From Squalus acanthias (taxonomy: Eukaryota), in contig CM059434.1 of assembly GCA_030390025.1 (NCBI GenBank), positions 131,564,001-131,628,000 of the forward strand: a stretch of 64,000 bases of DNA, written 5' to 3'. The notes under the pieces were generated by a model. It worked only from the letters and a program-made list of their open reading frames with translations. It searched no databases and was not told the origin of the DNA. This document shows, in pieces, positions 2,286 through 62,100 of this stretch. Both the position numbers and the translations under genes were made by a program. Position 1 is the first letter of the stretch; every line of letters begins with the position of its first letter.

Positions 2286-2402
2286 ACACATGTATGTATG
2301 ACCGACACACAATTATACAAAATTCATTGCTGCTAAACTTTGCATGAATTTTCCAAATAATATTGCCAAAAAATCTAATTCATAAAGTTATAAAACAATT
2401 AC

Positions 2403-2762
2403 CGGTTACATTCAGCAGTGTTCCATTTCCTTTTGCTTTAACATTTGGTGGAGGTGCAGTCTGAAACACCTCACAGTGATAGACTCCAGTGTCACTGGTT
2501 TGAACATCAGTAATCCATAAGGTGAATGCTTTCTGACTGGAGTTGTGCATTGCAGAATATCGAGAACGAGTCACCCGGGGTTCTTTGGTCGATAAGTTTG
2601 CGATGATCTTGGGAGAACTCTGGTCATCACCATGAAAAACCCACCATGCCTCGAACCTTCGTAGATCAGGTATTGAGTAGGAACAATTTAATGCGATCAA
2701 GTCTCCTTTTGTGACAGCAAGAGTATTAGGCTGCTGTAAATCCAGATCAATTGGCTGTCCAG
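2403..2762 (-). CDS. Ig V-set (VJ-type) domain exon; CD28/CTLA-4/NKp30-like immune receptor
   Basis: Acceptor ttccaag| and donor G|gtaatt bound a 360-nt phase 1-1 exon. It encodes the B-strand Cys (LNCSY), the Trp (AWWV), DTGVYHC and a J-like GNGTLLNV preceded by APPP, with five N-glycosylation sequons. Confidence 0.92.
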
Positions 2763-3486
2763 CTTGGAAAAGAGATTCAGAAGAAGTAATTACAATGTCA
2801 TGTACTGGGGATAAAATATTAGTAATGAACATGAATGTGTTTGTATGAAACTTCTCTGCTATTTTCATTGGAGCGGTTAACCCATTTAATTCCTTTGTTC
2901 AAATAGAGGATAAAACATTTTATGTGTTCACATTAATGTGTCTGTTACTAAATACCACACATCACATTTTCAACCTTATTGGGTTTAATTTTAAAGCTGC
3001 TCCTGCAGGTGTTAAAAAAGTAAACACAGGAATTTAGCACCACATAAGAAGAGCTGCTGACAAAATAGACCCATTGGGTGCGACATGATAAGATAAGAAA
3101 GTATGGAATGGAAAACAATGTTATTAACTGTACCCACCTTAATAACGGAGAATATTATGGTATTTTAGTAAAAGTGCATTATAGTGATACAAAACAACAC
3201 AGCAAGTACCATAACATGTATGAGGGATACATAGCACAGAATGGTGGTTTATGCAAACTGAACTGAGGAATATCGACGGCTGGCTCACAAATGGAACAGG
3301 CACAAGTGATTTAAGCATCTGTGAACCGAATAGTTTATTTTGCATAAATCACCAAATTTCTGACTTGTGCAATGCTTTTTTTTGGAAAGTTTAAATCAGT
3401 TTTTCACAGATTTTAGCTGCATTTATCAGCACAGATGCAGTGAAAGGCTGTGGCACGCTACACAATGAAATTAGAAATTGGCAATA

Positions 3487-8687: not shown

Positions 8688-10547
8688 ATGGCAGAGCAGG
8701 TTGTGTGCCTGGACTGCAGTATGTCGGAGTTTGTGGACAGCGAGACTGTCCCGAGTGAACACATCTGCAGCAGGTGTCTCCACCTCGAATCGCTCCGGCT
8801 CAGAGTCAGTGAGCTGGAGTGTGAGTTGGCGACTCGAATCTCTCCGGCTCAGAGTCAGTGAGCTGGAGTGAGAGTTGGCGACTCGAATCTCTCCGGCTCA
8901 GAGTCAGTGAGCTGGAGTGAGAGTTGGCGACTCGAATCTCTCCGGCTCAGAGTCAGTGAGCTGGAGTGAGAGTTGGCGACTCGAATCGCTCCGGCTCAGA
9001 GTCAGTGAGCTGGAGTGTGAGTTGGCGACTCGAATCGCTCCGGCTCAGAGTCAGTGAGCCGGAGTGTGAGTTGGAGACTCGAATCTCTCCGGCTCAGAGT
9101 CAGTGAGCTGGAGTGTGAGTTGGAGACTTGAATCGCTCCGGCTCAGAGTCAGTGAGCTGGAGTGTGAGTTGGAGACTCGAATCTCTCTGGCTCAGAGTCA
9201 GTGAGCCGGAGTGTGAGTTGGAGACTCGAATCGCTCCGGCTCAGAGTCAGTGAGCTGGAGTGTGAGTTGGAGACTTGAATCGCTCCGGCTCAGAGTCAGT
9301 GAGCTGGAGTGTGAGTTGGAGACTCGACTCCGGCTCAGAGTCAGTGAGCTGGAGTGTGAGTTGGAGACTCGAATCTCTCCAGCTCAGAGTCAGTGAGCTG
9401 GAGTGTGAGTTGGCGACTCGAATCGCTCCGGCTCAGAGTCAGTGAGCTGGAGTGTGAGTTGGAGACTCGAATCTCTCCGGCTCAGAGTCAGTGAGCTGGA
9501 GTGTGAGTTGGCGACTCGAATCTCTCCGGCTCAGAGTCAGTGAGCTGGAGTGTGAGTTGGCGACTCGAATCTCTCCGGCTCAGAGTCAGTGAGCTGGAGT
9601 GTGAGTTGGCGACTCGAATCTCTCCGGCTCAGAGTCAGTGAGCTGGAGTGTGAGTTGGAGACTCGAATCTCTCCGGCTCAGAGTCAGTGAGCTGGAGTGT
9701 GAGTTGGAGACTCGAATCGCTCCGGCTCAGAGTCATTGAGCTGGAGTGTGAGTTGGAGACACTTTGACGCATAAGGGAGGGGGAGGTGTATTTGGGCAGT
9801 TTGCTCCAGACTTTGGTCACGCCTCGTAGAAAGGTGCAGGATCAGAATGGGGTTGGTGTGACCGATAGTGTGCAGAGTAAGGGGAACCCAGGTAAGAAAG
9901 GGACCGAGGATCCACAGAAACTGATCCTATCCAACAGGTACAATGTACTTGCTACCTGTGAGGATAAGGATAAAGACTGTCAGAAGGACAGCCAGAATGC
10001 GGACCATGGCACTTTGGAGCAGGAGGCTGTCCTAAGGGGAGAGGAACAGGAGAGGAAGCGTAATGTGGTAGTTGTAGGGGATTCTATAATTAGGGGGACA
10101 GATAGCATTCTTTGTAAGCAAGATCGAGAGTCCCACATGATATGTTGCCTACCTGGTGCCAGGGTGAGGGACATCTCAAACCGGCTTGAAAGGATATTGG
10201 AGAGGGAGGGGGAGGATTCAGTCGTTGTGGTCCATATTGGGACCAACAACATAAGGAAGAGTAGGAAAGCGGTCATGTTTGGGGAGTACCAGGAACTCGG
10301 AGCTAAATTAAAGAACAGGACCTCAAGGGTTATAATCTCTGGATTATTACCTGAACCACGTGCAAATTGGCGTAGGGATAAGCTGATTAGGGAAGTAAAC
10401 ACGTGGCTAAAGGAGTGGTGTGGGAAAGAGGGGTACTGGCACCAGTATTGGGAGAGGAAGGAACTATACTGTTGGGACGGGCTCCACCTGAACCGATCTG
10501 GGACCTGGGTCCTAGCGGAAAGAATAGGGCGGTCACAAGGACTTTAA
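8688..10547 (+). pseudogene. Disrupted CR1 ORF1 (CxxC zinc finger, coiled coil, SGNH esterase-like domain)
   Basis: Starts MAEQVVCLDC..CSRC..LESLRLRVSELECEL, is interrupted by the 49-bp array and a TGA near 9765, then continues with GDSIIR, HIGTN and DGLHLN motifs. Confidence 0.88.
8784..9759. repeat. Minisatellite, 20 copies of a 49-bp unit, inside CR1 ORF1
   Basis: Unit ctcgaatc(g/t)ctccggctcagagtcagtgagctggagtgtgagttgg(c/a)ga; 19x49 plus one 45-bp unit = 976 bp. Confidence 0.95.
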
Positions 10548-12668
10548 ATTAGTAAGTGGGGGAGAGGGCTCAAGGGGAAATTGCAGTACAAATAGTAGTT
10601 CAAAAACAAACGAAAGGGAAGAGAGTAGAGCAGCAGTCAGAAATTGTGCTTTAGGCACTACAGGTAAGGGGAAAACTAAAAGATGTAAAGCGATTAAACC
10701 AGGAGAGAGAAATAAGAAACATGTGAGTAAAACATTAGAGCTGAAGGACAGGCTCGGGTGTGTGGCCCAAATAAGCGTTCGTTATATAAACGCACGGAGT
10801 ATAAGGAATAAATTGAATCAACTGCAGGCACAAATTCAAATTAGAGGGTATGACATGGTAGCCATTACTGAGACATGGCTGCAAGACGGTCAAGACTGGG
10901 AACTAAATATGCCAGGTTATAAGGTCTACAGGACAGATAGGGAAAATGGCAGAGGGGGAGGAGAAGCCTTAGTGATTAGGGATGAAATCACTTCAATGAT
11001 AAGAGAGGATATAAAGAGAGGTAAGCAGCCAGTGGAGACCTTATGGGTTGAATTAAGAAATAGGAAAGGATCTAAGACTGTAATGGGAGTTGTGTATAGG
11101 CCCCCTGGTAGCAGCTCTGAAGTGCTAGATTGTATAAATGCAGAGATTAGACAAGCGTGCAGTAAAGGCAGAGTGGTTTAAATGGGGGCATTTAACTTTC
11201 TCATAGATTGGGAAAAGCAGACTAGCACCTGTCGGAAAGGTAGTGAATTTCTTGAGTGTGTCCGGGATGGTTTTCTACAACAATATGTCCTAGAGGCAAC
11301 AATGGGGCAAGCCATATTAGATTTAGTAATGAGCAATGAGCCAGATTTAGTTAACAGCCTGACTGTGCGTGAACATTTATCCAATAGCGATCATAACATG
11401 ATCGAGTTCAATGTAGTGTTTGAAAGGGAGAAACGTGAAACAGCTACTCAGATTCTAGATTTAGGTCAGGCCTACTTCGACGGGATGAGGCAGAGACTGT
11501 CCACAGCAAACTGGGCAAATCTGTTAATGGGTAAAATGACTGAAGATCAGTGGGAGATGTTTAAAAAATAATTTAAAGTGATCCAGAACCAGTTTACACC
11601 CCTGAGGAGCAAGAGCTCAACTTGCCAAAAAAACCAGCCATGGACAACGAAAGAGGTAAGGGACAGCATAAAACTAAAGGAAAGGGCATACAAAAATACA
11701 AAAACTAGCACAGATCCTGGTGAATGGGAAAGATACAAAGAACAGCAAAGGGTCACAAAACAGATAGGAAGAGCTACAAAAAGGGAGTATGAAAAGAAAC
11801 TTGCAAGAACATAAGAAATAGGAGCAGGAGTAGGCCATTTGGCCCCTCGAGCCTGCTCCGCCATTCAATAAGATCATGGCTGATCTGGTCTTGGCCTCAA
11901 CTCTACTTTCCTGCCCGCTCCCCGTAACCCTTGACTCCCTTATCGTTCAAAAATCTGTCTATCTCCACCTTGAATATATTCAATGACCCTGCCTCCACAG
12001 CTCTCTGGGGTAGAGAATTCCAAAGATTCACGACCCTCTGAGAGAAGAAATTCCTCATCTCCGTTTTAAATGGACGACCCCTTATTCTGAAACTATGCCC
12101 CCTAGTTCTAGATTCCCCCACGAGTGGAAACATCCTCTCTGCATCTACCCTGTCGAGCCCCCTCAGAATCTTATGTTTCAATAAGATCCCCTCTCATTCT
12201 TCTAAACTCCAATGAGTATAGGCTCAACCTGCTCAACCTTTCGTCATACGTCAACCCCTTCATCCCAGGAATCAACCTAGTGAACCTTCTCTGAACTGCC
12301 TCCAATGCAAGTATATCCCTCCTTAAATATGGAGACCAAAACTGTACTCAGTACTCCAGGTGTGGTCTCGCCAACGCCCTATACAGTTGTAGCAGGACTT
12401 CCCTACTTTTATACTCCATCCCCCTTGCAATAAAGGCCAACATTCCATTTGCCTTCCTAATTACTTGCTGTACCTGCATGGTAAGTTTTTGTGCTTCATG
12501 TACAAGGACCCCCAGATCCTTCTGCACCGCTGCATTTTGTAGTCTCTCTCCATTTAAATAATAATTTGCTTTTTTATTTTTCCTTCCTCACATTTTCCCA
12601 CATTATACTCCATCTGCCAAATTTTTGCCCACTCACTTAACCTATCTATATCCCTTTACAGATTCTTT

Positions 12669-17455: not shown

Positions 17456-20400
17456 AGATACATAGATACATAGATACATAGAAGATAGGAGCAGGAATAG
17501 GCCATCCGGACCTTCGAGCCTGCTCCGCCATTTAATGAGATCATGGCTGATCCTCCAATTCAGTATCCCGTCCCCGCCTTCTCTCCGTAACCCTTAACCC
17601 CTTTTGCCTGTAGAAATATATCTAATTCCCTCTTAAATATATTTAATGAGCTGGCGTACACTGCCCTCTGTGGCAATGAGTTCCACAGGTTCACCACCCT
17701 CTGAGTGAAGAAATTCCCCCTCATTTCTGTCCTAAATGGTTTAGCCCTTATCCTTAAATTATGTCCTCTAGTTCTGTTCTCACCCGCCAAGGGAAACATT
17801 CCTTCTGCATCTAGTCTGTCTAGACCTGTCAGAATTTTATACACTTCTATGAGGTCCCCTCTCAATCTTCTAAACTCCAGTGTGTACATCCCTAAACTAC
17901 ATAGTCTCTCCTCATAGGTCAATCCCGCCATTCCTGGTATCAGCCTGGTGAATCGCCGCTGCACCCCCTCCATGGCAAGAACATCTTTCCTCAGATGAGG
18001 CGACCAAAACTGTACACAGTACTCGAGGTGTGGTCTCACCAGTGCCCTGTACAGCTGCAGCAAGGTATCCCTGTTCCTGTATTCCAACCCTTTTGCTATG
18101 AAGGCCAGCATACCGTTTGCCTTCTTGACCGCCTGTTGCACCTGCATGCTCGCCTTCAGTGACTGGTGTACAAGAACACCCAGGTCTCTCTGTACTTCCC
18201 CCTCTCCCAATTTATTGCCATTTAAATAATAATTTGCCCTCCCGTTCCTGCACCCAAGGTGGATAACTTCGCACTTGTCCACATTATAGTGCATCTGCCA
18301 TTTATCCGCCCAATCACCCAGTCTGTCCAAATCGCTCTGGAGCTTCCTGGTCTCCTCCTCTGAGCCCACCCCCCCTCCTAGTTTAGTGTCGTCTGCAAAT
18401 TTGGAAATGCTGCATCCGACTCCCTGATCCAGGTCATTAATGTAAATTGTGAACAGCTGGGGACCCAGGACAGATCCCTGTGGTACCCCACTTGTTACTG
18501 CCTGCCATTCAGAAAATGAGCCGTTTATTCCAACTCTCTGTTTTCTATCTGACAGCCAGTTCTCTATCCACGTCAATACTTTCCCCTTTATCCCATGAGC
18601 TTCAATTTTCCATGCTAATCTTTTATGTGGGACCTTATCGAAGGCCTTTTGGAAGTCCAGGTACACCACATCTACTGGCTCTCCCCCATCTATTTTACCA
18701 GTTACTCCCTCAAAAAATTCCAATAGATTAGTCAAGCACGATTTACCCTTTGTAAATCCATGTTGACTCTGTCCTATCCTGTCCCCATTTGCTAAGTGCT
18801 CCGCTATTTCATCCTTAATGATGGACTCCAGCATTTTGCCCACAACTGATGTAAGGCTTACAGGTCTGTAATTACCTGCTTTTTCCCTACCCCCCTTTTT
18901 GAATAGTGGGGTAACGTTAGCTACCCTCCAATCCATGGGCACTGTTCCCGAGTCTAATGAATTCTGAAAAATCATACTGAGTGCATCCGCTATCTCTAGG
19001 GCCACCTCCTTCAGTACCCTAGGATGCATGTTATCAGGCCCTGGGGATTTGTCCGCCTTCAATCCCTTTAGCTTCCTTAACACCATATCCTTAGAGATAT
19101 TGATTTGTGTCAGTTCCTCCTTTGCCAATGTCCCTATTTTTCCCGATATCCCAGGGAGGTTTTTGTGTCTTCCTTCGTAAAGACTGACCCAAAGTATGCA
19201 TTTAGTTGGTCTGCCATTTCCTTATTTCCCGTTATATATTCCCCCGTATCTGACTGCAATGGACCAACTTTGGTTTTCACCAGTCTTTTCCTCTTGATAT
19301 ACTTATAAAAGCTTTTGGAGTTAGTTTTTATATTTTCCGCCAGCTTGCTTTCGTAAACTATTTTGCCCCTCTTGATTAAGCCCTTTGTCCTCCTTTGCTC
19401 TATCTTAAACTGTTCCCAATCTTCCGCTCTTGCGCTTTTTTGGGCTATTTTATACGCCCTATCTTTGGATTTTATGCTGTCTCTAATTTCCCCTGTTATC
19501 CACGGTTGAGTCACCTTTTTAGATTTCCTTTTATGCCAGATTGGTATAAACAATTTTTGCAATTTTGTCATTCTATCTTTAAATGCTTGCCATTGTTTAT
19601 CTACCTCCAGTCCTCCCAGGAACGTTGTCCAATCAGACCTACTCCGTTCCCGTCTAATGGCATCATAATTCCCCTTGTTTAAATTCAGGACCTTAGTCTC
19701 TGAGTCAATTTCTTCGCTCTCCATTTCGAGTGAGAAATCGATCATGTTATGATCGCTCTGACCCAAGGGTCCCCGTACAACAAGATTACTAATTAGTCCC
19801 TTCTCATTGCACAGTACCCAGTCCAATATAGCCTGTTCCCGAGTTGGTTCCTCGACATATTGATCCAGATAACCATCCCTTAAACACTCAAGGAATTCCT
19901 CCTCCTCATTATTTTTACTGATTAGGCTAGTCCAATCTATATGTAAGTTAAAGTCACCTATGATGACAGCTGTGATCTTATTGCACGCTTCTCTAATTTC
20001 CCTCGTGATGCCCTCCCCAACCTCTATTTTACTATTTGGAGGCCTATATACCACTCCTATTAATGTTTTTCGCCCCTCGCTATTTCTTAGCTCCACCCAT
20101 ATAGATTCTGTATTAACTGAGTTAATATCCTTCCTTTCAATTGCATTTATCCCCTCTTTTACCAGCAATGCTACCCCTCCTCCCTTTCTTTTTTGTCGAT
20201 CCTTCCTAAATACTGAATACCCCTGTATGTTAAGCTCCCAGCCCTGCTCACCCTGCAACCATGTTTCCGTAATGCCAATTAGATCATAATTATTAACCTC
20301 TATTTCCACAGCTAATTCATCTACCTTGTTCCTGATGCTTCTCGCATTAAGGTATAAAACCCTCAGGCTTTTTTTATGCTCACATTTTTTATGAATTAGT

Positions 20401-20736
20401 TTGGCCCTTTGTTTTTTGTTCCTCACCCTTTTACCATTTATTTCTGTCTGCCTTTCACTTTCCTCTATTTCACTACATAGGTTTCTAGCCCCCTGCCATA
20501 CTAGTTTAAATGCTCCCGAACTGCTTTATCAAAAATTACCCCGAGAACATCAGTTCCATCTTTGCACAGGTGTAGACCGTCCCTTTTGTATAGGTCACAC
20601 CTACCACAAAACTGGTTCCAATGCCTCAAAAATTTAAAACCCTCCCTCTTACACCACTGCTCAAGCCACGTATTTAGCCTAACTATCCTGTTCTCTGTAC
20701 TCTTACTAGCACGTGGCACTGGTAGTAATCCAGAGA
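17456..20736 (-). mobile_element. 5'-truncated young CR1 LINE with near-intact ORF2
   Basis: ORF1 C-terminus at 20501-20736 (DGLHL), EN ORF 19134-20426, RT ORF 17560-19128 ([15 protein letters not shown]) and a (gatacata)3 tail at 17456. Confidence 0.95.
17560..20426 (-). pseudogene. CR1 ORF2 (AP endonuclease + reverse transcriptase) with a single frameshift
   Basis: The 430-aa and 522-aa ORFs join into about 955 aa if one base is added to the homopolymer at 19160-19164. Confidence 0.88.
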
Positions 20737-22850: not shown

Positions 22851-24347
22851 ACTCCAGCCAAGCCGTTCCAGTACAGCTACAACACTGCCATCTATCTGAC
22901 AATGTGGAAAACTGCCCAGGTGTGTCCTGTCCACAAAAAGCAGGACAAATCCAATCTGGCCAATTATCGCCCCATCAGTCCACACTCAATCATCAGCAAA
23001 GTGATGGAAGGTGTCATCGACACTGCTATCAAGTGGCACTTACCAATAATCTGCTCACTAATGCCCAGTTTGGGTTCCGCCAAGACCATACGGCTCCTGA
23101 CATCATTACAGCCTTGGTCTAAACATGGACAAAGGAACTGAATTCCAGAGGTGAGAGTGACTGCCCTTGACATCAAGGAAGCATTTGACCAAGTGTGGCA
23201 TCAAGGAGCCCTAGTAAAACTGAAGTCAATGGGAATCGGAGGGGGGGGGGGGGGGGGGGCAGTTGGGGAAACTCTCCACTGGCTGGAGTCATACCTAGCA
23301 CAAAGGAAGATGGTTGTGGTGGTTGGAGGTCAATCATCACAGCCCCAGGATATCGCTGCAGGAGTTGCTCAAGGCAGTGTCCTCGGCCCAACCATCTTCA
23401 GCTGCTTCATCAATGACCTTCCCTCCAACTTAAGGTCAGAAATGGGGATGTTCGCTGATAACTGCACAGTGTTCTGTGCCATTCACAACTCCTCAGATAA
23501 TGAAGCAGTCCATACCCGCATGCAACAAGACCTGGACGACGTTCAGGCTGGGCTGATAAGTGGCAGGTAACATTCGCGCCACAGAAGTGCCAGGTAATGA
23601 CTATCTCCAACAAGCAAGAGTCTAACCACCGCCCCTTGACACTCAACGGCATTACCATCGCCAAATCCCCCACCATCAACATCCTGGGGGGGTCACCATT
23701 GACCAGAAACTTAACTGGACCAGCCACATAAATACTGTGGCAACAAGAGCAGGTCAGAGGCTAGGTATTCATCGGTGAGTGTCTCACCTCCTGACTCCCC
23801 AAAGCCTTTCCACCATCTACAAGGCACAAGTAAGGAGTGTGATGGAACACTCGCCACTTGCCTGGATGAGTGCAGCTCCAACAACACTCAAGAAGCTCGA
23901 CACCATCCAGGACAAAGCAGCCCACTTGATCGGCACCCCATCTACCACCTTAAACATCCACTCCCTCCACCACCGGCGTACCGTGGCTGCAGTGTGTACC
24001 ATCTACAAGATGCACTGCAGCAACTCGCCAAGGCTTCTTCGGCAGCACCTCCCAAAACCGCGACGTTTTCCACCTAGAAGGAGAAGGGCAGCAGGTGCAT
24101 GGGAACACCACCACCTGCAAGTCACACACCATCCTGACTTAGAAGTATATTGCCGTTCCTTCATCGTCGCTGGGTCAAAATCCTTGAACTCCCTGCCTAA
24201 CAGCGCTGTTGGGAGTACCTTAACCACATGGTGTACAACGGTTCAAGATGGCGGCTCACCACCACCGTCTCCGGGGCAATTAGGGGTGGGCAATAAATGC
24301 TGGCCTTGCCAGCGACGCCCACATCCCATGAACGAATCAAAAAAAAA
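22850..24347 (+). mobile_element. LINE RT and 3' end (CR1/L2/Jockey group; same family as 36066-37569)
   Basis: NYRPIS, ALDIKEAFDQVWH, GVAQGSVLGP, MFADN and [11 protein letters not shown] motifs; tail gggcaataaatgctggccttgccagcgacgcccacatccc followed by an A run. Confidence 0.88.
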
Positions 24348-47100: not shown

Positions 47101-50100
47101 ATTTGAATTATGAATAGTAATATAAAAGTGCGCATGAGTACTTGGAGGGTTAATGCTATTTTTGGTACTAGCTCACCTGTTTTGTTTAAGGATTGTATCT
47201 TTAACTTGGTTTGTCTGAAGTGCGGGCTATATGGAGGCTCAATTAGATGTCCGGTTTGAGGGTATGAGATTGCTGTGAGCAAGTGATCACTTCCTGCAGC
47301 CTTCATCATCTTCTGGATCTGAAATGGAAAAGTAACCAAATTTACACCTTCAAGTATTTCTGGTCAATACCGCAAATCTCATTTACGAATTAATTGATTC
47401 GTGACAAAATGGAGCATAATATGCACTTACCGCAATGGCTGATTCAGGTGCAGGCCAGTTCTGATCATCCTCCCCAGAAATAAGCATCAAGGGGCATCTG
47501 ATTTTATCAACCTGCCAATCAAACATAAGAGTTTATGCAGTGGAGAGTTAACAACAGTTCATGAGTATGAAGTCCTGTCACTCAAATATCCGGCAGGCAT
47601 GAGAAAGTAGAAATATCCTTTGCACAAATGAGAAATATACAAATATCTCTTTGCCATTTGAGATCTTGGTAACTACCTCAGCTCAGAACTTTCTCTACAT
47701 TTGTCTCCCTATAAAGGCATCTTTTGAATTCAAACATTTGTTTTGCAGCAGGAGTTTATAACATGAGTTTGTGCAACAAACGCCATTAAAATTTAGAATT
47801 CCAATAGACAAAATTCACTTGCGAGTTGAGGAACAGGGAGAGAGTGCAGATAAACACGTGGCTGCAGGGATGGTGTAGGGGGGAGGGTTTCAGTTATGTG
47901 GATAATTGGAGCACATTCTGGGGAAGGTGGGACCTGTACAAACAGGACGGTTTGCACCTGAACCAGAGGGGCACCAATATCCTGGGAGGGAAATTTGCTA
48001 CGGCTCTTCGGGGGGGTTTAAACTAATTTGTCAGGGGGATGGGAAAAAGGGCTGTAGTCCACGAGCCAGTGGTGAGTGTAGGGAGGTACTGAGGAGGGTA
48101 TCAAGGTCGCAGGAATGTACCGGCAGACAGGAAGATGGCTTGAAGTGTGTCTACTTCAATGCAAGGAGCATCCGGAATAAGGTAGGAGAACTTGGAGCGT
48201 GGATTGGTACTTGGGACTACGATGTGGTGGCCATTACGGAGACATGGTTAGAACAGGGACAGGAATGGCTGTTGGAAGTTCCGGGGTATAGATGTTTCAG
48301 TAAGAGTAGGGAAGTTGGTAAGAAAGGTGGAGGAGTAGCATTGTTAATCAAGGATAGTTTAACAGCGGCAGAAAGGCAGTTCGAGGGGGATCTGCCGTCT
48401 GAGGTAATATGGGCTGAAGTTAGAAACAGGAAAGGAGCGGTCACGTTGTTAGGAGTTTTCTACAGGCCCCCAAATAGTAATAAAGATGTGGAGGAAGAAA
48501 TTGCAAAGCAGATTATGAATAGGTGTGGAGGTCACAGAGTAGTTGTCATGGGTGACTTCAACTTTCCAAATATTGATTGGAACCTTTATAGGTCAAACAG
48601 TTCGGATGGGATAGTTTTTGCACAGTGTGTGCAGGAGGGTTTCCTGACACAATATGTGGATAGGCCGACAAGAGGTGGGGCCACGTTGGATTTGGTACTG
48701 TGTAATGAACTGGGCCAAGTGTTTGATTTGTATGTGGGAGAGCACTTTGGAGATAGTGACCACAATTCGGTAACTTTCACTATTGCAATGGAGAGGGATA
48801 GGGCCATACGGCAGGGCAGGGTTTATAATTGGGGGAGGGGTAATTATGATGCGATTAGGCAAGAATTAGGGAGTATAAGATGGGAACAGAAACTATCAGG
48901 GAAAGGCACAAACGAAAAGTGGAGCTTTTTCATGGAGCAATTACTGCGTGTCCTTGATAGGTATGTCCCTGTCAGGCAGGGAGGAAATGGCCGAGTGAGA
49001 GAACCATGGTTCACAAAAGAGGTTGAATGTCTAGTCAAGAGGAAAAAGGAAGCGTATGTAAGGATGAGAAAACAAGGTTCAGTTGGGTCGATTGAGGGGT
49101 ACAAGGTAGCAAGGAATGAGCTAAAAAAAGAGCTTAGGAGAGCTAGGAGGGGGCATGAGAAGTCCTTGACGGGTCGGATCAAGAAAAACCCCAAGGCTTT
49201 TTACTCTTATGTGAGAAATAAAAGAATGACCAGGGTGAGGGTAGGGCCGGTCAAGGACAGTAGTGGGAACTTGTGCATGGAGTCAGAAGAGATAGGAGAG
49301 GTGATGAATGAATACTTTTCGTCAGTGTTCACCGAGGAGAGGGGCCATGTTCTTGAGGATGAGAGTGTGATAAAGGTGGATAGGCTGGAGGTGGTAGATG
49401 TTCTGAGGGAAGATGTTTTAGCAATTTTGAAGAACCTGAGGGTCGATAAGTCCCCTGGGCCAGATGGGATATATCCTAGGATTCTTTGGGAGGCAAGGGA
49501 GGAGATTGCAGAGCCTCTGGCTTTGATCTTTGGGTCCTCACTGTCCACGGGGATGGTGCCAGAGGACTGGAGAGTGGCGAATGTTGTTCCTCTCTTCAAG
49601 AAAGGAAATAGGAATGACCCTGGTAATTATAGGCCGGTTAGTCTTACTTCGGTGGTTGGTAAGATAATGGAAAAGGTCCTGAGGGATAGGATTTATGACC
49701 ATTTGGAAAGGGGCAACTTAATCAGGGATAGTCAACACGGATTCATGAAGGGTAAGTCTTGCCTAACAAATTTGATTGAATTCTTTGAGGAGGTAACTAA
49801 GTGTGTAGATGAAGGTAGAGCAGTTGATGTCGTATACATGGATTTTAGTAAGGCGTTTGATAAGGTTCCCCATGGTCGTCTCATGAAGAAAGTAAGGAGC
49901 TGTGGGATAGAGGGAAATTTGGCCGATTGGATAAGTAACTGGCTATCTCATAGAAGTCATGATGCGGAGATGCCGGTGTTGGACTGGGGTGGACAAAATT
50001 GAGAGGTCGCTGTATCTAATTTACTTCACCTGAGGAAGGAGCAAATCAATAGCTCCGAAAGCTTGTGATTTCAAATAAAACTGTTGGACTATAACCTGGT

Positions 50101-53100
50101 GTTGTGCGACCTCTCAATTTTATCTCATAGAAGGCAGAGGGTGGTGGTGGATGGAACATTTTCGGACTGGAGACCAGTTACCAGCGGTGTGCCACAGGGG
50201 TCGGTGCTGGGTCCTTTGCTGTTTGTGATTTTTATCAATGACTTGGAGGAGGGGACTGAAGGGTGGATCAGTAAATTTGCTGATGACACCAAGATTGGTG
50301 GAGCAGTGGATGAGGTGGAGGGCAGTTGTAGGCTGCAAAGAGCCATTGATAGGATGCAGAGCTGGGCCGAAAAATGGCAGATGGAATTTAACCCTGATAA
50401 GTGCGAGGTGATTCATTTTGGTAGGGCAAATTTGAATAAGGATTACAGGGTCAACGGCAGGGTTCTGAGGAACGTGGAGGAGCAGAGGGATCTGGGGGTT
50501 CATATCCACAGATCTCTAAAGGTTGCCACTCAAGTGGATAGAGCAGTAAAGAAGGCCTATGGTGTGTTGGCGTTTATTAACAGAGGGTTTGAGTTTAAGA
50601 ACCGTGAGGTTATGCTGCAACTGTACAGGACCTTGGTGAGACCACATTTGGAATATTGTGTGCAGTTCTGGTCACCTCACTATAGGAAGGACGTGGAAGC
50701 ATTGGAAAGAGTGCAAAGGAGATTTACCAGGATGGTTTGGGGGGGAGGTCTTATGAGGAAAGATTGAGGGAGTTGGGGCTTTTCTCTTTAGAGCAGAGGA
50801 GGATGAGAGGCGACTTAATAGAGGTTTATAAGATGATGAGGGGGATAGATAGAGTGGATGTTCAGAGACTATTTCCTCGGGTAGAGGCAGCTGTTACAAG
50901 GGGGCATAACTATAAGGTGCATGGGGGGAGATATAGAAGGGATGTCCGAGGTAGATTCTTTACTCAGAGAGTGGTTGGTGTGTGGAATGGACTGCCTGCT
51001 GTGATAGTGGAGTCGGACACTTTAGGAACTTTCAAGCGGTTATTGGATAAGCACATGGAGCACACCAGAGTGATAGGGAGTGTGATAGCTTGATCTTGGT
51101 CTCGGACAATGCTCGGCACAACATCGAGGGCCGAAGGGCCTGTACTGTGCTGTACTGTTCTATGTTCTAGTTATATAGGGCCTTGGTGAGACCACACCTG
51201 GAGTACTGTGTACAATTTTGGTCTCCTTACCTAAGGAAGGATATACTTGCCATAGAGGGAGTGCAATGAAGGTTCACGAGATTGATTCCTGGGATGGCGG
51301 GACTGTCGTATGAGAAGAGATTGAGTAAACTAGGCCTGTATTCTCTTGAATTCAGAAGAATGAGCGGGGATCTCATTGAAGCACACAAAATTATTAGAGG
51401 GCTTGATGGATGGATGCTGGGAGAATGTTTCCCTTGGCTGGGGAGTCTAGAACCAGGGGCCACAACCTCAAGATAAAGGGTAGGCCATTCAGGACTGGGA
51501 TGAGAAGAAATTTCTTCACACAGAGGGTGGTGAATCTTTGGAATTCTCTACCCCAGAGGGCTGTGGAGGCTCAGTCATTGGGTATATTCAAAACAGAAGT
51601 CGATAGATTTCTGACTAGTATGGGCATCACAGATATGGCGATAGGGCCGGTGAATGGAGTTGAGGCAGAAGATCAACCATGATCTCATTGAATGTTGGAG
51701 CAGGCTCGATGGGCCGAATGGCCTACTCCTGCTCCTATTTCTTATGTTCTGCCGTATATGGATTAACATAGTCGAGGTCTAACGATTAACCCCAAATCAC
51801 AGTATATTGGCCACTGGCGAATAGTAGGATGCTTATTACGATGGATCTTGCTGTCCTGATTCAGAGCATAAGAACATCTACATTCAATTATTTTTTTCCA
51901 AAATACAAATTTGTAGTTTACCAGTAATACAGCAGTTTTAAGTTGGCTGCAGTAACTGCATGCTGAGAAAGCATTACCAAAGGCAATCTACAAAGGCCAT
52001 CTGCAACTGCCAAAAACAAATGACTTATCTTCGTTCATGTTGATCAAGGGAGATCCCAAGTAAGCCCTGGTAACAATAATAGTAATTAATGTAGATCAAT
52101 GGCTTACCAGACTCTGAGCTCTGCTTTGTCCTGAAGATGTGTGAATTGCCTGAGTGAAGGGATACCTTTACTCTGAAGGGCTACCCTGCTAACTTTGACA
52201 CCTGAGTTGATTGAAATCATTGCAAGAAATGTTTCACAGTGGGTTGGCTTTGATTCATTATAAATGATAGTCGTCTATCTATCTTTGTACTAGCCTAAAT
52301 CAATGAAAAGAAATGTGAATGGGACCAGAGTCAGTTCTGTTATATGGGCCATGGGCTAATAAAGCAGTGAATTTCTCACACAAAAGTTTTTCATCAAAGA
52401 CATGTAGTTCTAGTTACTAAAGTTACTGCAAAGAACTGTTAAGGCGTCTTGGCTATTGGTTTTAAACTACTGGTGAAAAATTCATTATGTAACTGGACAC
52501 ATATTAGAAGGCTCAAACATTAAATTCCAGTTTCATACAAATTTCAATTTGAAATTTTGAGCTAGTTTGCTGATTGATCCATTTTGATCCTGTGCTCTTT
52601 GTCTCATTAAAATATAATTGGTTGTTTTCAGCCTAGGTCATACTAACATTATTTGATTGAATTTTTTGAGGAGGTAAGAAGGAGGGTAGATGAGGGTAGT
52701 GTGATTGATGTAGTGTATATGGACTTTAGCAAGGCTTTTGATAAGGTTCCACATGGCAGACTGGTCACGAAGTTAAAAGCCCATGGGATCCAGGGCAAAG
52801 TGTCAAGTTGGATTCAAAACTGGCTCGGAGACAGGAAGCAGAGGGTACTGGTTGATGGGCGCTTTTGTGACTGGAAGGCTGTTTCCAGTGGGATTCCGCA
52901 GGGCTCAGTACTAGGTCGCTTGCTTTTTGTGGTATATATCAATGATCTAGACTTGAATATTGGGGGTATGATTAAGAAGTTTGCAGATGATACTAAAATC
53001 GGATGTGTGGTTGATACTAAAGAAGGACTGCAGGAAGATATCAATAAATTGGTCAAGTGGGCAGAACAGTGGCAAATGGAATTCAATCCGGAGAAGTGTA

Positions 53101-59100: not shown

Positions 59101-62100
59101 TACAGGGTTGTACGAAGAGAATCAGAATACCAAGCCGGGGAGACAGTTTAGGAGGCTGAAAATTAATTCAATGCAAGAGAGGCCATAAAATATCACAAAT
59201 GGAAATGTCACATTGGTCCAAGTGGAGTGACCTTCTAAAGTTGGGATTACGGCACATCAGTGGAGTAGAGTAATGGGTGCATTACACTGCAAATGGCTCT
59301 GCTGTATCTGATCTGAGAGTTCTTAGTGTTGACACAATTAAAAATGAAAGTGTTCTATTTCATTGCATCTCTTATCTTGAAGAACCAAAAACGCAATTAA
59401 GATTAAGAAATACTTGTTCCCTTTCACAAATTACCCCACAATCCTATATTTGTATGGCTTCATCACTGGCAGTAGGTTGGTCTGACTGCCTACCAGAGAT
59501 TCTATTACAAATACCTGGATTGAGAACTTAAAGTGACTACTCAGCGAAGGTAAATCTAAGTGTACTTTTTGTTTAAAATACTCCCCTATTTTTCTTTTAC
59601 TGTAAAATAATATTCTCACTACTTTAGCAAAATAACAGGAGTTTCCCTATCACCAAATCCACAATACCCAGTGTAGTTTTCAGCATGGCCATTCAATTTG
59701 GTGCCTACATTATGCAGCTCTGGAACACTGCTCTTGAACACTTTGATGAATTAACTGTTTTCTCAAAGGCTTTGGAGATATCCAAGGCAAAGTTAAGCAC
59801 TGTATACTAAGCAAGTTAGTATATGGATACACACCAAAACAATTGTATACTCCTGGGATGATGTTTCCTCTGAATCAATATTTGTGCTGTTGCTCATGGC
59901 TCACCTTCCAACTGTTTTTCCATTAATTTAGGGGTTTCCCAGTATTCTGTTCCCTCTTCAATAACATCAACTTGTATTTATATAGCGCCTTTAACGTAGT
60001 AAAACGTTCCATGGTGCTTCACAGGAGTGTTATCAAACAAAATTTAACTTTGAGCCACATAAGGAGATATCAGGGCAAAGACAAAGAGGTAGGTTTTAAG
60101 GAGCATCTTAAAGGAGGAAAGAGAGGTAGAGAGTAGGAGAGGTTTAAGGAGGGAATTCCAGAGCTTAGGGCCTCAGCATCTGAAGGAATAGCTGCCAATG
60201 GTGGAGCAATTAAAATTGAGGATGCTCAAGAGGCCAGAATTGGAGGAGCACAGCTTTCTCTGAGGGTTGTCGGCAATGTTCCCCCTAAGCTGCACGGGCC
60301 GCTCATCAGCTTTTCTGCTGGAAAAGATACCGGGCATGTGCAGCCGCTGGACCGCGCACCTAAAATAAAAATTAGATAGAACATTAGTTGTGGGGCTGGA
60401 GGTGGTTACAGAGATAGGGAGGAGCAAGGCCATGGAGGGATTTGAAAACAAGGATGAGAGTTTTAAAATAGAGGCGTTGCTTATCTGGGAGCCAATGTAG
60501 GTCAGCGAGCACAAGGATAATGGGTGAACGGGACTTGATGCGAGTTAGGGTACGGGCAGCAGAGTTTTGGATGACTTTTAAGTTTACGGAGGGTGGAAGA
60601 TGGGAGGCCGGCCTGGGGTTCATTGGAATAGTCAAGTCTGGAGGTAACAAAGGCATGGATGAGGGTTTCAGCAGATCAGCTGAGGCAGGGGTGGAGTCAG
60701 GAGATGTTACGGAGGTGGAAACAGGCGGTCGTAGTGATGGCGTGGATATGTGGTCGGAAGCTCATCTCAGGGTCAAATAAGACACCAAGGTTGTGAACAG
60801 TCTGGTTCAGCCTCAGACAGTTGCCAAGGAGAGGGATGGTGTCGGTGGATAAGAAATGGAGTTTGTGGCAGGGGCCGAAGATAATGGCTTCAGTCTTCCC
60901 AATATTTAGTTGGAGGAAATTTCTGCAAATCCACTACTGGATGTTGGACAAGCAATAAGACAATGCAGAGACAGTGGCGGGGTTGAGAGGTGGTGGTGAG
61001 GTAGAGCTGGGTGTCGTCAGTGTACATGTGGAAACTGATGATGTCGTCGAGGGGCAGCATGTAGATGAGAAATAGGAGGGAGCCAAGGATAGAACCTTGG
61101 GGGACCCCAGAGATAACGATGCGGGAGTGGGAAGAGAAGCCATTGCAGCTGTTTCTCTGGCTTCGACTGGATAGATAAGAATGGAACCAGGCAAGTGCAG
61201 TCCCACCCAGTTGGATGACAGTGGAGAGGTGTTGGAGGAGGATGGTGTGGTCAACTGTGTCAAAGGCTGCAGACAAGTCAAGAAGGACAAGGAGGGATAA
61301 TTTACCTCCGTCAGTCACATAGGATGTCATTTGTGACTTTGATAAGAGCTGTTTCGGTACGGTGGCAGGGACGGAAACCTAATTGGAGGGATTCAAACAT
61401 GGAGTTCCGGGAAAGATGGACACGGATTTGGGAGGCGGCAACACGTTCAAGGACTTTGGAGAGGAAAGGGAGGTGGATATGGGGCGGTAGTTTGCAAGGA
61501 TGGAGGTGTCAGGATTGTTTTTTTGAGAGGGGTGATGACGACAGATTTGAAGGAGGGGGGGACAGTACCGGAGGAGAGAGTACCGTTAACAATATCAGCT
61601 AACATGGGGGCCAGGAAGGGAAGCTGGGTGGTCAGCAGTTCAGTGGGAATAGAGTCGAGGGAGCAGGAGGTGGGTGTCATGGACACTCCATTCGTTCTTC
61701 CCATCAATAACCTCCTCCTTAGATTAATTTCCTACAGATTGCACCCCCTCAGTGTTCAAAACCACCAGACCTCTGGCAGTGTAATGTCTGAATCACTACA
61801 TCTTGATCTCCAGTGTGCCCTTCAATGGTGCAATAAAAATCTTACTTGTTTCAATTTCTTGATGTCTTTCCCAAGTTTAACTCAACAGCTACCATGATTG
61901 TTGACCTTCCTATAAAGCCCCAAGTCCATCCAGGCCTTCAGTATTGTTCTACTAACACCTGTTGCATTTGTCCATCTCCCTATCTCTCTCACACATACAA
62001 CCTTGTCTTTCTCTTTTATTGATAGTTCTCTGCTGTTCTCTGAAATTTCCTCTTTTCATTCCTTCTAAGCTCCAAATAGACCTTCCTACACATTCTTCCT

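What the first reader, a model, noticed from the sequence alone, without database searches (positions are those of the whole stretch)
49944..50133. 164-bp hammerhead-ribozyme-bearing mobile element freshly inserted into a CR1 reverse transcriptase gene
Seen: a perfect 13-bp TSD, and excising the insert restores [14 protein letters not shown] in CR1 ORF2. Inside, UCAC-CUGAGGA-A-GGAGC(loop)GCUCC-GAAA-GCUU-GUGA folds as a minimal type-I hammerhead with a palindromic AGCU stem III. The first ~54 bp end in an inverted copy of the element's last 15 bp. Established: Penelope-like elements carry minimal hammerheads with palindromic stem III, proposed to cleave as dimers, and show partial inverted terminal repeats. 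Inference: this is a small non-coding, ribozyme-processed retroelement family that has moved recently. The extra A after the core is atypical.
Basis: partly seen in the sequence, partly recalled or inferred. Interest (0 to 1): 0.82.

Follow-up and report, generated by a model that had tools for sequence, protein, structure and literature searches.

The report
Truncated, folded-back Penelope-type hammerhead insertion
A 164-base insertion in a LINE reverse-transcriptase gene is real and carries a Penelope-type minimal hammerhead motif, but it is an ordinary truncated, partly inverted copy of the tail of a very abundant repeat, not a small element family of its own.

Summary
A 164-bp insert (49957-50120) sits between perfect 13-bp duplications. 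Cutting it out restores the LINE ORF2 frame. Contigs of three of four public runs hold the uninterrupted form. The insert carries one minimal type-I hammerhead motif. It is the only hit in the window on both strands, with 0 hits in 50 shuffles. No Rfam hammerhead model matches it.

Other copies of the repeat read straight through both the inner junction (50010|50011) and the right end (50120). The insert is therefore the last 149 nt of a longer, very abundant element. Its terminal 54 nt are inverted and overlap the direct part by 15 nt. Strong 5' truncation, an adjacent inverted copy, a 30-40-bp tail at one end only and a short TSD are the published Penelope-like element (PLE) insertion architecture. 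The 'atypical' extra A is a published hallmark of PLE minimal hammerheads.

A near-identical hammerhead lies about 750 nt downstream of a PLE-type endonuclease ORF on a metagenome contig. I found no PLE ORF in this window, and I could not do covariation or cleavage tests.

First-stage notes of this scan describe the same kind of mini-insertion elsewhere in this genome.

The parts
49944..49956 (.). Left copy of the target-site duplication (TATCTCATAGAAG)
   Evidence: The empty-site joint has 13 letters that fit either side.
50121..50133 (.). Right copy of the target-site duplication. Its first T may belong to the element instead.
   Evidence: The inverted repeat I1 runs on into 50121-50124 with 3 of 4 matches.
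49957..50120 (.). The whole 164-bp insert
   Evidence: joint skipping 177 = 164 + 13.
49957..50010 (-). Inverted arm: the family's true last 54 nt, read on the minus strand. 49957 is the family's 3' terminus.
   Evidence: Contigs with unlike flanks start at 49957-49959 (X3 61+67, X6 10, X8 11+14, X13 1 at 49956; agreement 0.37-0.46). After 50010 other copies go on as the reverse complement of 50081-50107 (X3 52, X6 33, X8 31, X13 1; agreement 0.90-0.94).
49957..49995 (-). 39-nt 'tail', present only on the inverted arm and missing from the direct arm
   Evidence: Script overlap of 15 nt. Other copies continue after 50121 with the start of this tail (X3 54, X8 12, X6 18 at 50116). Compare the one-sided 30-40-bp tail of PLEs (PMC8557442; PMC3846280).
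50011..50120 (+). Direct arm of 110 nt: 15 nt upstream sequence (50011-50025), the hammerhead motif, and the first 52 nt of the tail region
   Evidence: Other copies carry 25+ further letters upstream of 50010/50019 (X13 1 contig, X8 1 contig), so the arm is 5'-truncated.
50026..50068 (+). Minimal type-I hammerhead motif. Helix I is 50026-29 / 50065-68. The core CTGAGGA is 50030-36, with the unpaired A at 50037. Helix II is 50038-42 / 50052-56, with loop 2 at 50043-51. GAAA is 50057-60. The palindromic AGCT is 50060-63 and H17 is 50064. The predicted cleavage site is 50064|50065.
   Evidence: A near-identical motif stands on L001/L002. No Rfam match.
50106..50120 (.). 15-nt stretch present in both arms (inverted repeat with 49996-50010)
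50082..50090 (+). 9-nt block TGTTGGACT, repeated directly at 49977-49985. In the uninverted parent RNA the two would pair and close a loop that holds both breakpoints.
   Evidence: The fold is no better than shuffles (z -0.4 to -0.5), so this is weak.
47906..50767 (+). Host LINE ORF2 (APE endonuclease + reverse transcriptase), open on both sides of the insert

Best explanation
The insert is a dead-on-arrival retrocopy of the last 149 nt of the RNA of a very abundant hammerhead-bearing element of the Penelope-like (PLE) kind. The parent may be a coding PLE or a non-coding derivative that PLE machinery moves; that is unresolved.

Shown: the insertion duplicated 12-13 bp of a young LINE ORF2. The family's true 3' end lies at 49957 on the minus strand. 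The terminal 54 nt are inverted relative to the remaining 110 nt, with 15 nt present in both. Both the inner junction and the right end are truncation points, not family boundaries.

Inferred mechanism:
1. Staggered nicks were made about 12-13 bp apart.
2. The plus-strand 3'-OH at 49956 primed cDNA on the RNA's 3' end, and 54 nt were copied.
3. The other strand's 3'-OH at 50121 primed 39 nt inside the same RNA. There is T..TC microhomology with the target at that point. 110 nt were copied.
4. The two cDNAs were joined at 50010|50011.
This is a twin-priming-like or self-priming route. It yields the inverted arm plus one-sided tail that PLE insertions typically show.

The hammerhead came along as a passenger. 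It has only a 2-bp, loopless helix III, so it cannot fold actively alone and would need a second copy. This copy is probably inert.
For: - TSD, restored frame and natural empty-site contigs.
-, contigs of 4 runs at 80% likeness (8627, 7, 1329 and 1721 laid): the canonical continuation after 50010 is seen in 52/33/31/1 contigs (X3/X6/X8/X13) and after 50121 in 54/12 contigs (X3/X8; X6 18 at 50116).
- unlike flanks begin at 49957-49959. Extra upstream sequence precedes 50010/50019 in X13 and X8.
- other fold-back joints run from 50010 to 50060, 50068, 50088 and 50093 (one X3 contig each), so the direct arm's 5' end varies between copies.
- The overlap of the two arms is 15 nt and the inferred parent fragment is 149 nt.
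- PLE papers describe strong 5' truncation, an adjacent inverted 5'-truncated copy and a 30-40-bp tail at one end only (PMC8557442, passages). In Adineta vaga the tail is 31 bp, the inverted and direct pLTRs overlap by 15 bp, and TSDs are 8-10 bp (PMC3846280, passages).
- All sequence features that PMC4209133 lists for PLE min-HHRs are present.
- Metagenome contig L002 has the same motif: by my reading of alignment A1, 32 of 34 positions outside loop 2 are identical, and the two differences are N7 and H17.
- On L002 the motif lies about 750 nt downstream, on the same strand, of an ORF whose longer form P0001 matches the C-termini of 800-980-aa proteins. Of 10 such proteins scanned, 7 carry RVT_1 and 2 carry GIY-YIG. 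The Atlas's nearest clusters carry GIY-YIG.
Against: - No PLE ORF lies in this window. None of the 30 ORFs of 130 aa or more has GIY-YIG, and the two extra RT fragments are LINE-like.
- I could not fetch any other copy from this genome, so the parent's length and coding status are unknown.
- The link to PLEs rests on motif, architecture and a contig of another organism. Its tail aligns only weakly with this one, and blastn finds the hammerhead alone (E 5e-4).
- Pfam itself finds nothing in the L002 ORF, even at E<=10.
- Rfam hammerhead models do not match.
- Everything laid is contigs, so depths are not copy numbers and the lists were cut (233 loose ends and 15 joints not shown).
- Whether the exact 50010|50011 junction recurs elsewhere is not known.
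Confidence: 0.8

Rival explanations
1. One reading: the 164-bp unit is itself a small non-coding, ribozyme-processed retroelement family that transposes as such.
For: - Clean TSD and a young look.
- One fold-back junction of another geometry (50010->50060) sits on a contig of word depth 326 in X3, so some fold-back forms may be multi-copy.
- Unchecked first-stage notes of this scan speak of mini-element 'families'.
Against: - Other copies read through both 50010 and 50120 and extend upstream of 50011.
- The ends do not coincide with the hammerhead cleavage site.
- Neither strand of the insert keeps the whole 3' module, i.e. motif plus full tail.
- There is no second copy in the 64-kb window.
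Confidence: 0.05
2. The parent is a non-LTR retrozyme, a short tandem non-coding hammerhead repeat expressed as circular RNA. This would be a monomer copy of it.
For: Animal retrozymes are reported as non-autonomous relatives of PLE pLTRs, with many dispersed monomers, and are present in 1 of 1 Chondrichthyes and most non-amniote vertebrates sampled (bioRxiv 10.64898/2026.07.22.740005, abstract and results read; PMC7229834, passages). The tail block is far more abundant in the contigs than the LINE flanks (depth caveat).
Against: - There is no tandem arrangement here.
- The motif is the minimal PLE type without a helix III loop, not the canonical type I with loop-loop contacts.
- The family has a defined 3' terminus with unlike flanks. 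That fits linear-RNA TPRT better than rolling-circle copying.
Confidence: 0.12
3. A SINE-like element moved by a LINE (CR1, L2 or similar), with the hammerhead-like motif incidental.
For: A 12-13-bp TSD also fits APE-type LINE integration, and the window is full of LINEs.
Against: - Rfam gave no tRNA, 5S or 7SL match at E<=10 in 48000-52000.
- The insert shares no tail similarity with any LINE in the window (blastn with word size 7).
- The motif has all PLE min-HHR features, and a near-identical one stands beside a PLE-type EN ORF on L002.
Confidence: 0.03
4. The hammerhead resemblance is by chance or is a decayed relic, and no ribozyme activity exists in any copy.
For: No Rfam hit. Published PLE min-HHRs showed no activity as monomers and only low activity as dimers in vitro (PMC4209133).
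Against: - 0 hits in 50 shuffles against 1 observed.
- The same block is kept on L001/L002 while the flanks differ. All differences fall at N7, H17, loop 2 and the distal end of helix I.
- Two other variants among the contigs keep CTGANGA, the unpaired A and the 5' strand of stem II (loose ends: X3 22 contigs, X13 1).
Confidence: 0.1

Closest known systems
Minimal hammerhead ribozymes (min-HHR) of Penelope-like elements (Cervera & De la Pena 2014, PMC4209133; parts 1-2 of the text read)
   Same: - CUGANGA and GAAA boxes.
[quoted passage not shown]
- A G10.1-C11.1 pair.
- Palindromic positions 15.2-16.2 with no helix III loop.
- A short helix I (4 bp).
- Mostly found as single dispersed motifs ascribed to truncated PLEs, sometimes as pairs on opposite strands.
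   Different: Helix II has 5 bp and a 9-nt loop; the paper describes 7-8 bp in Schistosoma families. No PLE ORF is next to it here. Activity is untested.
Penelope-like element insertion architecture (Arkhipova et al. 2013, PMC3846280; Craig et al. 2021, PMC8557442; passages read)
   Same: Strong 5' truncation; an inverted 5'-truncated copy next to the direct one; a 30-40-bp tail at one end only (39 nt here); a 15-nt overlap of inverted and direct parts (15 bp in Pen2a_Av); a short TSD (8-10 bp there, 12-13 here); insertion into another retrotransposon.
   Different: It is miniature: 164 bp in all, with no ORF and no complete pLTR. The inverted part consists almost only of the tail.
Animal non-LTR retrozymes (Cervera & de la Pena 2020, PMC7229834, passages; Li, Clavereau & Pollet 2026 preprint, 10.64898/2026.07.22.740005, abstract and results)
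   Same: Non-coding, hammerhead-bearing, related to PLE pLTRs, with many monomers dispersed in non-amniote vertebrate genomes.
   Different: Retrozymes are defined by tandem units with type-I hammerheads and circular RNAs. Here there is one unit, it is not tandem, the ends are not at the cleavage site, and the structure is inverted.
Twin priming of human L1 (5' inversions). Recalled from memory; no paper was read here.
   Same: The 3' part is direct, the 5' part is inverted, there is a small overlap at the inversion junction, and a TSD is kept.
   Different: Different enzyme family (GIY-YIG PLE against APE LINE). For PLEs a self-priming route has also been proposed (PMC3846280).

Membership tests
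PLE minimal hammerhead (min-HHR) | Catalytic boxes CUGANGA and GAAA in type-I order, with H17 before helix I | tested here: met
   50030-36 CTGAGGA, 50057-60 GAAA, H17 = T at 50064.
PLE minimal hammerhead (min-HHR) | [quoted passage not shown] | tested here: met
   A at 50037; G50038 pairs with C50056. The feature is listed in PMC4209133.
PLE minimal hammerhead (min-HHR) | Palindromic 15.2-16.2 with no or minimal helix III, allowing a dimer | tested here: met
   AGCT at 50060-63. I could not evaluate dimer formation itself: my dimer structure was not evaluable as written.
PLE minimal hammerhead (min-HHR) | Stems kept by compensatory changes across copies | tested here: inconclusive
   Only two distinct full motifs were in hand (window, L001=L002), and their stems are identical.
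PLE minimal hammerhead (min-HHR) | Self-cleavage at the predicted site | not testable with these tools
   All runs were kept as contigs, which cannot show RNA ends.
Rfam hammerhead families (type I and others) | Match to a curated covariance model | tested here: not met
   No hammerhead match at E<=10 on 4 kb or on 101 nt, and none at gathering score in 64 kb. Probably (my inference) because these models include a helix III hairpin, which the motif lacks.
Penelope-like element insertion | RT + GIY-YIG ORF in the element or in a parent with the same tail | tested here: inconclusive
   None in the window.
Penelope-like element insertion | 5' truncation, adjacent inverted copy, one-sided 30-40-bp tail, short TSD | tested here: met
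   set against PMC8557442 and PMC3846280.
Non-LTR retrozyme | Head-to-tail tandem units, each with a type-I hammerhead | tested here: not met
   A single unit between TSDs; there is no tandem array at the locus.
Non-LTR retrozyme | Circular RNA of unit length | not testable with these tools
   Contigs only.
LINE-dependent SINE | Pol III head (tRNA, 5S or 7SL) and a 3' tail shared with a partner LINE | tested here: not met
   No such Rfam match at E<=10 in 48000-52000. No similarity to any LINE of the window. LINEs outside the window were not tested.

The most novel reading that the evidence does not exclude
The 3' module of these elements would be a conserved cis-element: the minimal hammerhead, a spacer, and a hairpin whose loop holds both breakpoints seen here. 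It would direct a programmed second priming step inside the loop. Mini fold-backs would then be regular products rather than accidents, and some of them (for example the junction on a contig of word depth 326 in X3) would have become self-amplifying non-coding lineages.

The pairing 50082-90 with the reverse complement of 49977-85 seems to be kept on L002 through changes on both sides. That is my reading of alignments A1 and A2, with n = 2.
Probability: 0.12. Interest if true: 0.55.

Novelty: new member of a known kind. Interest (0 to 1): 0.25.

Why it matters
It matters little beyond annotation. The locus is a clean, datable example of how Penelope-type integration leaves truncated, partly inverted, one-tailed copies, and of how minimal hammerheads are scattered through a vertebrate genome as passengers.

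It also carries a practical warning. Such motifs are missed by Rfam models, and their fold-back shape invites misreading as a new small element or a MITE.

If the breakpoints proved to be fixed across many copies, the locus would help to dissect the still unsolved PLE integration mechanism.

Tried and rejected
- Rfam: no hammerhead match.
- Other copies inside the window: none within 3 mismatches or by blastn with word size 7.
- Exact 22-mer of the tail in metagenome and prokaryote genome collections: 0 hits each.
- Paper search for two 17-mers of the tail: 0 papers. So I found no printed description of this tail by that string. Supplements were closed. The supplementary alignments of PMC4209133 and the supplementary tables of the 2026 preprint may already hold this family.
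- The search of earlier findings by sequence: blank. One word query: blank.
- Hammerhead dimer energy: my structure was not evaluable as written, so I dropped it.
- Fold of the inferred parent tail: no better than shuffles, so the hairpin is only a lead.
- Pfam on the L002 ORF: nothing, even at E<=10. PDB by sequence: one weak unrelated hit, E 0.092.
- The search for homologous proteins: only one near-identical protein.
- ORFs of 30 aa or more lying wholly inside the insert, as handles for look-ups: none.
- MITE or DNA transposon: rejected. The left 'TIR' is not terminal, a 13-bp TSD is unusual for them (recalled), and other copies have another arrangement.
- LINE targeting (scan note s1-947196): the flanks of other copies are unlike each other (agreement 0.37-0.46), so there is no sign of one preferred site. 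The lists were cut.
- Depths were not used as copy numbers. X6 and X8 are only guessed to be RNA, so I claim nothing about expression.

Full report
THE OBSERVATION. The sequence is as described. TATCTCATAGAAG stands at 49944-49956 and again at 50121-50133, around a 164-bp insert at 49957-50120. Joining the flanks in a script gives one open frame through ...[14 protein letters not shown]...FADD.... The flanking ORFs carry Exo_endo_phos plus RVT_1 on the left (E 4e-22 and 6e-18) and RVT_1 on the right (E 2.5e-15). The host is therefore an APE+RT LINE; I did not test whether it is CR1. Nature supplies the control. Among contigs of four public runs laid on 49880-50200, a joint from 49943 to 50121 skips 177 letters, with 13 letters fitting either side. 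It appears in X3 (2 contigs), X13 (one 2849-nt contig with 1 other letter) and X8 (1 contig). In X6 one contig reads from 49956 straight into the downstream LINE sequence. These may be other LINE copies or empty alleles. Either way they show the uninterrupted target.

THE HAMMERHEAD MOTIF. 50026-50068 reads TCAC / CTGAGGA / A / GGAGC-AAATCAATA-GCTCC / GAAA / GC / T / T | GTGA. My descriptor required both boxes, an optional unpaired base, a stem II closed by G-C, a palindromic helix III, H17, and a helix I of at least 3 bp. It found this one site in the window on both strands and none in 50 shuffles. The MFE fold of 50024-50072 forms helices I and II. Rfam gives no hammerhead match at E<=10 on 4 kb or on 101 nt, and nothing at gathering score in 64 kb. 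I take this to reflect the missing helix III hairpin, but it stands as a negative result.

[quoted passage not shown] All are present here. The same paper reports no cleavage for a single motif and low activity for dimers.

WHAT OTHER COPIES SHOW (contigs only; 80% likeness; 8627, 7, 1329 and 1721 contigs laid for X3, X13, X6 and X8).
(a) Contigs with mutually unlike flanks begin at 49957-49959: X3 61 and 67, X6 10, X8 11 and 14, X13 1 at 49956, with agreement 0.37-0.46. This is a true family terminus.
(b) After 50010 other copies do not continue as this insert does. They continue with the reverse complement of 50081-50107: X3 52, X6 33, X8 31, X13 1, with agreement 0.90-0.94.
(c) After 50121 they continue with the reverse complement of the left arm's outer part: X3 54, X8 12, and X6 18 at 50116. 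Agreement is 0.48-0.65, falling where the contigs end.
(d) Upstream of 50010/50019, one X13 contig and one X8 contig carry 25 or more further letters.

In the family, therefore, the motif is followed by one continuous tail of about 91 nt that ends at what is here 49957. The insert consists of that tail's last 54 nt, inverted, followed by 110 nt (15 nt upstream sequence, the motif, and 52 nt of tail). The two parts share 15 nt, so 149 nt of the parent are represented.

Other fold-back joints are also present, from 50010 to 50060, 50068, 50088 and 50093, each with 2-5 extra canonical letters between (one X3 contig each; word depths 326, 156, 24 and 54). The 5' end of the direct arm therefore varies between copies.

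At a share of 5% or more, only three places vary among the laid copies. 50048 is A here and G in about 92% of the X3 depth; it lies in loop 2, at a CpG in the majority form. 50043 has a one-letter deletion, also in loop 2. 50080 differs as well. Two divergent variants at contig ends keep CTGANGA, the unpaired A and the 5' strand of stem II (X3 22 contigs, X13 1 contig).

COMPARISON WITH THE LITERATURE. [quoted passage not shown] Arkhipova et al. describe for Pen2a_Av a 31-bp tail on one of the inverted pLTRs, a 15-bp overlap of inverted and direct pLTR, and TSDs of 8-10 bp. They discuss self-priming as the source of the inverted repeats (PMC3846280, passages). Here the tail is 39 nt and sits on the inverted arm only, the overlap is 15 nt, and the TSD is 12-13 bp.

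LINK TO A PLE ORF. There is none in the window. Of the 30 ORFs of 130 aa or more, none has GIY-YIG, and the RT fragments at 23151-23570 and 60890-61330 are 34-42% identical to a LINE RT of the window.

A scan of metagenome contigs with a pattern generalised from the motif found two contigs, L001 and L002, which are 99.6% alike over 677 nt. Their motif is identical to this one at 32 of 34 positions outside loop 2, by my count on alignment A1. The differences are N7, H17, loop 2 (3 nt against 9), and one more base pair in helix I. Those are the positions the hammerhead leaves free. The flanks, by contrast, align only weakly: blastn finds the motif alone, E 5e-4.

On L002 an ORF on the same strand (90-581) ends about 750 nt upstream of the motif. 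Pfam finds nothing in it. The ESM Atlas puts it at 0.97 next to chordate clusters in which 31-34% of members carry GIY-YIG. Its longer form P0001 has 5314 relatives at E<=0.001. Among the listed hits are proteins of about 800-980 aa that it matches at their C-termini. Of 10 of these scanned, 7 have RVT_1 upstream of the match and 2 have GIY-YIG above Pfam's cut-off inside it. That is the PLE domain order.

So a near-identical motif is shown to belong to a PLE in another organism. For this genome the link is inferred. First-stage notes of this scan report GIY-YIG remnants beside such motifs on other pieces of the same genome, and mini-insertions with 12-bp TSDs. I could not check them.

MECHANISM. 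Shown: the duplicated target, the orientation of the two arms, the family's 3' terminus, and the non-boundary nature of the inner junction and the right end. Inferred: target-primed reverse transcription from the plus-strand nick at 49956 copied the RNA's last 54 nt. A second priming from the opposite nick, 39 nt inside the RNA, copied 110 nt; there the target and the RNA share T..TC (3 of 4). The two cDNAs joined at 50010|50011, where one C fits either side.

The predicted cleavage site 50064|50065 lies inside the direct arm and 91 nt from the family terminus, so the ribozyme did not set the ends of this copy. With a loopless 2-bp helix III and no partner motif in 64 kb, this copy is most likely inert.

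In the uninverted parent, 50082-90 would pair with the complement of 49977-85 and close a loop holding both breakpoints. The fold is no better than shuffles (z about -0.4 to -0.5), so I keep this as a lead only.

NOT DONE. Genome-wide copy number, the parent's length, recurrence of the same junction, covariation, presence or absence in other individuals, expression and cleavage.

VERDICT. This is a real, young insertion of a known kind: a truncated, folded-back Penelope-type 3' fragment with a passenger minimal hammerhead. It is neither a new class nor a 164-bp family.

Noticed in passing
window 2380-2868 (-): A 162-aa ORF with an immunoglobulin V-set domain (Pfam E 1.3e-15). Possibly an exon of a host immune-type gene among the repeats.
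   Followed up: no
window 9786-11181 (+): An ORF with a GDSL-lipase/OSK-like domain (E 2e-8) directly upstream of an APE endonuclease fragment. It looks like a LINE with an esterase-type ORF1.
   Followed up: no
window 17560-20426 (-): A second LINE with long open APE (430 aa) and RT (522 aa) frames. Together with the host LINE at 47906-50767 it suggests recently active LINEs.
   Followed up: no
Read laying on window 49880-50200, joint 50010->50060 (X3): A fold-back junction of another geometry sits on a contig of word depth 326. One fold-back form may itself be multi-copy.
   Followed up: no
Read laying, X6 joint 50121->49958 with 25 letters between: On one contig a direct arm ends at the same place as here. 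After 25 unrelated letters the inverted terminus begins. This may be a recurrent right-end breakpoint or two adjacent insertions.
   Followed up: no
L002 1-109 and 983-1091: A 109-nt inverted repeat (94.5%) inside the metagenome PLE contig, between the EN ORF and the hammerhead. A 12-nt direct repeat lies at 1267-1278 and 1423-1434, flanking the hammerhead.
   Followed up: partly
P0114 (863 aa, relative of P0001): Carries an N-terminal OTU-like cysteine protease domain (E 7e-7) and the PLE-type C-terminus, with no RVT_1 hit at E<=0.001.
   Followed up: no
window 50082-50090 / 49977-49985 and L002 about 1388-1396 / 1444-1451: The stem that would close the tail loop in the parent RNA seems to be kept on L002 through changes on both sides. 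This is my reading of alignments A1 and A2, from two sequences only.
   Followed up: partly
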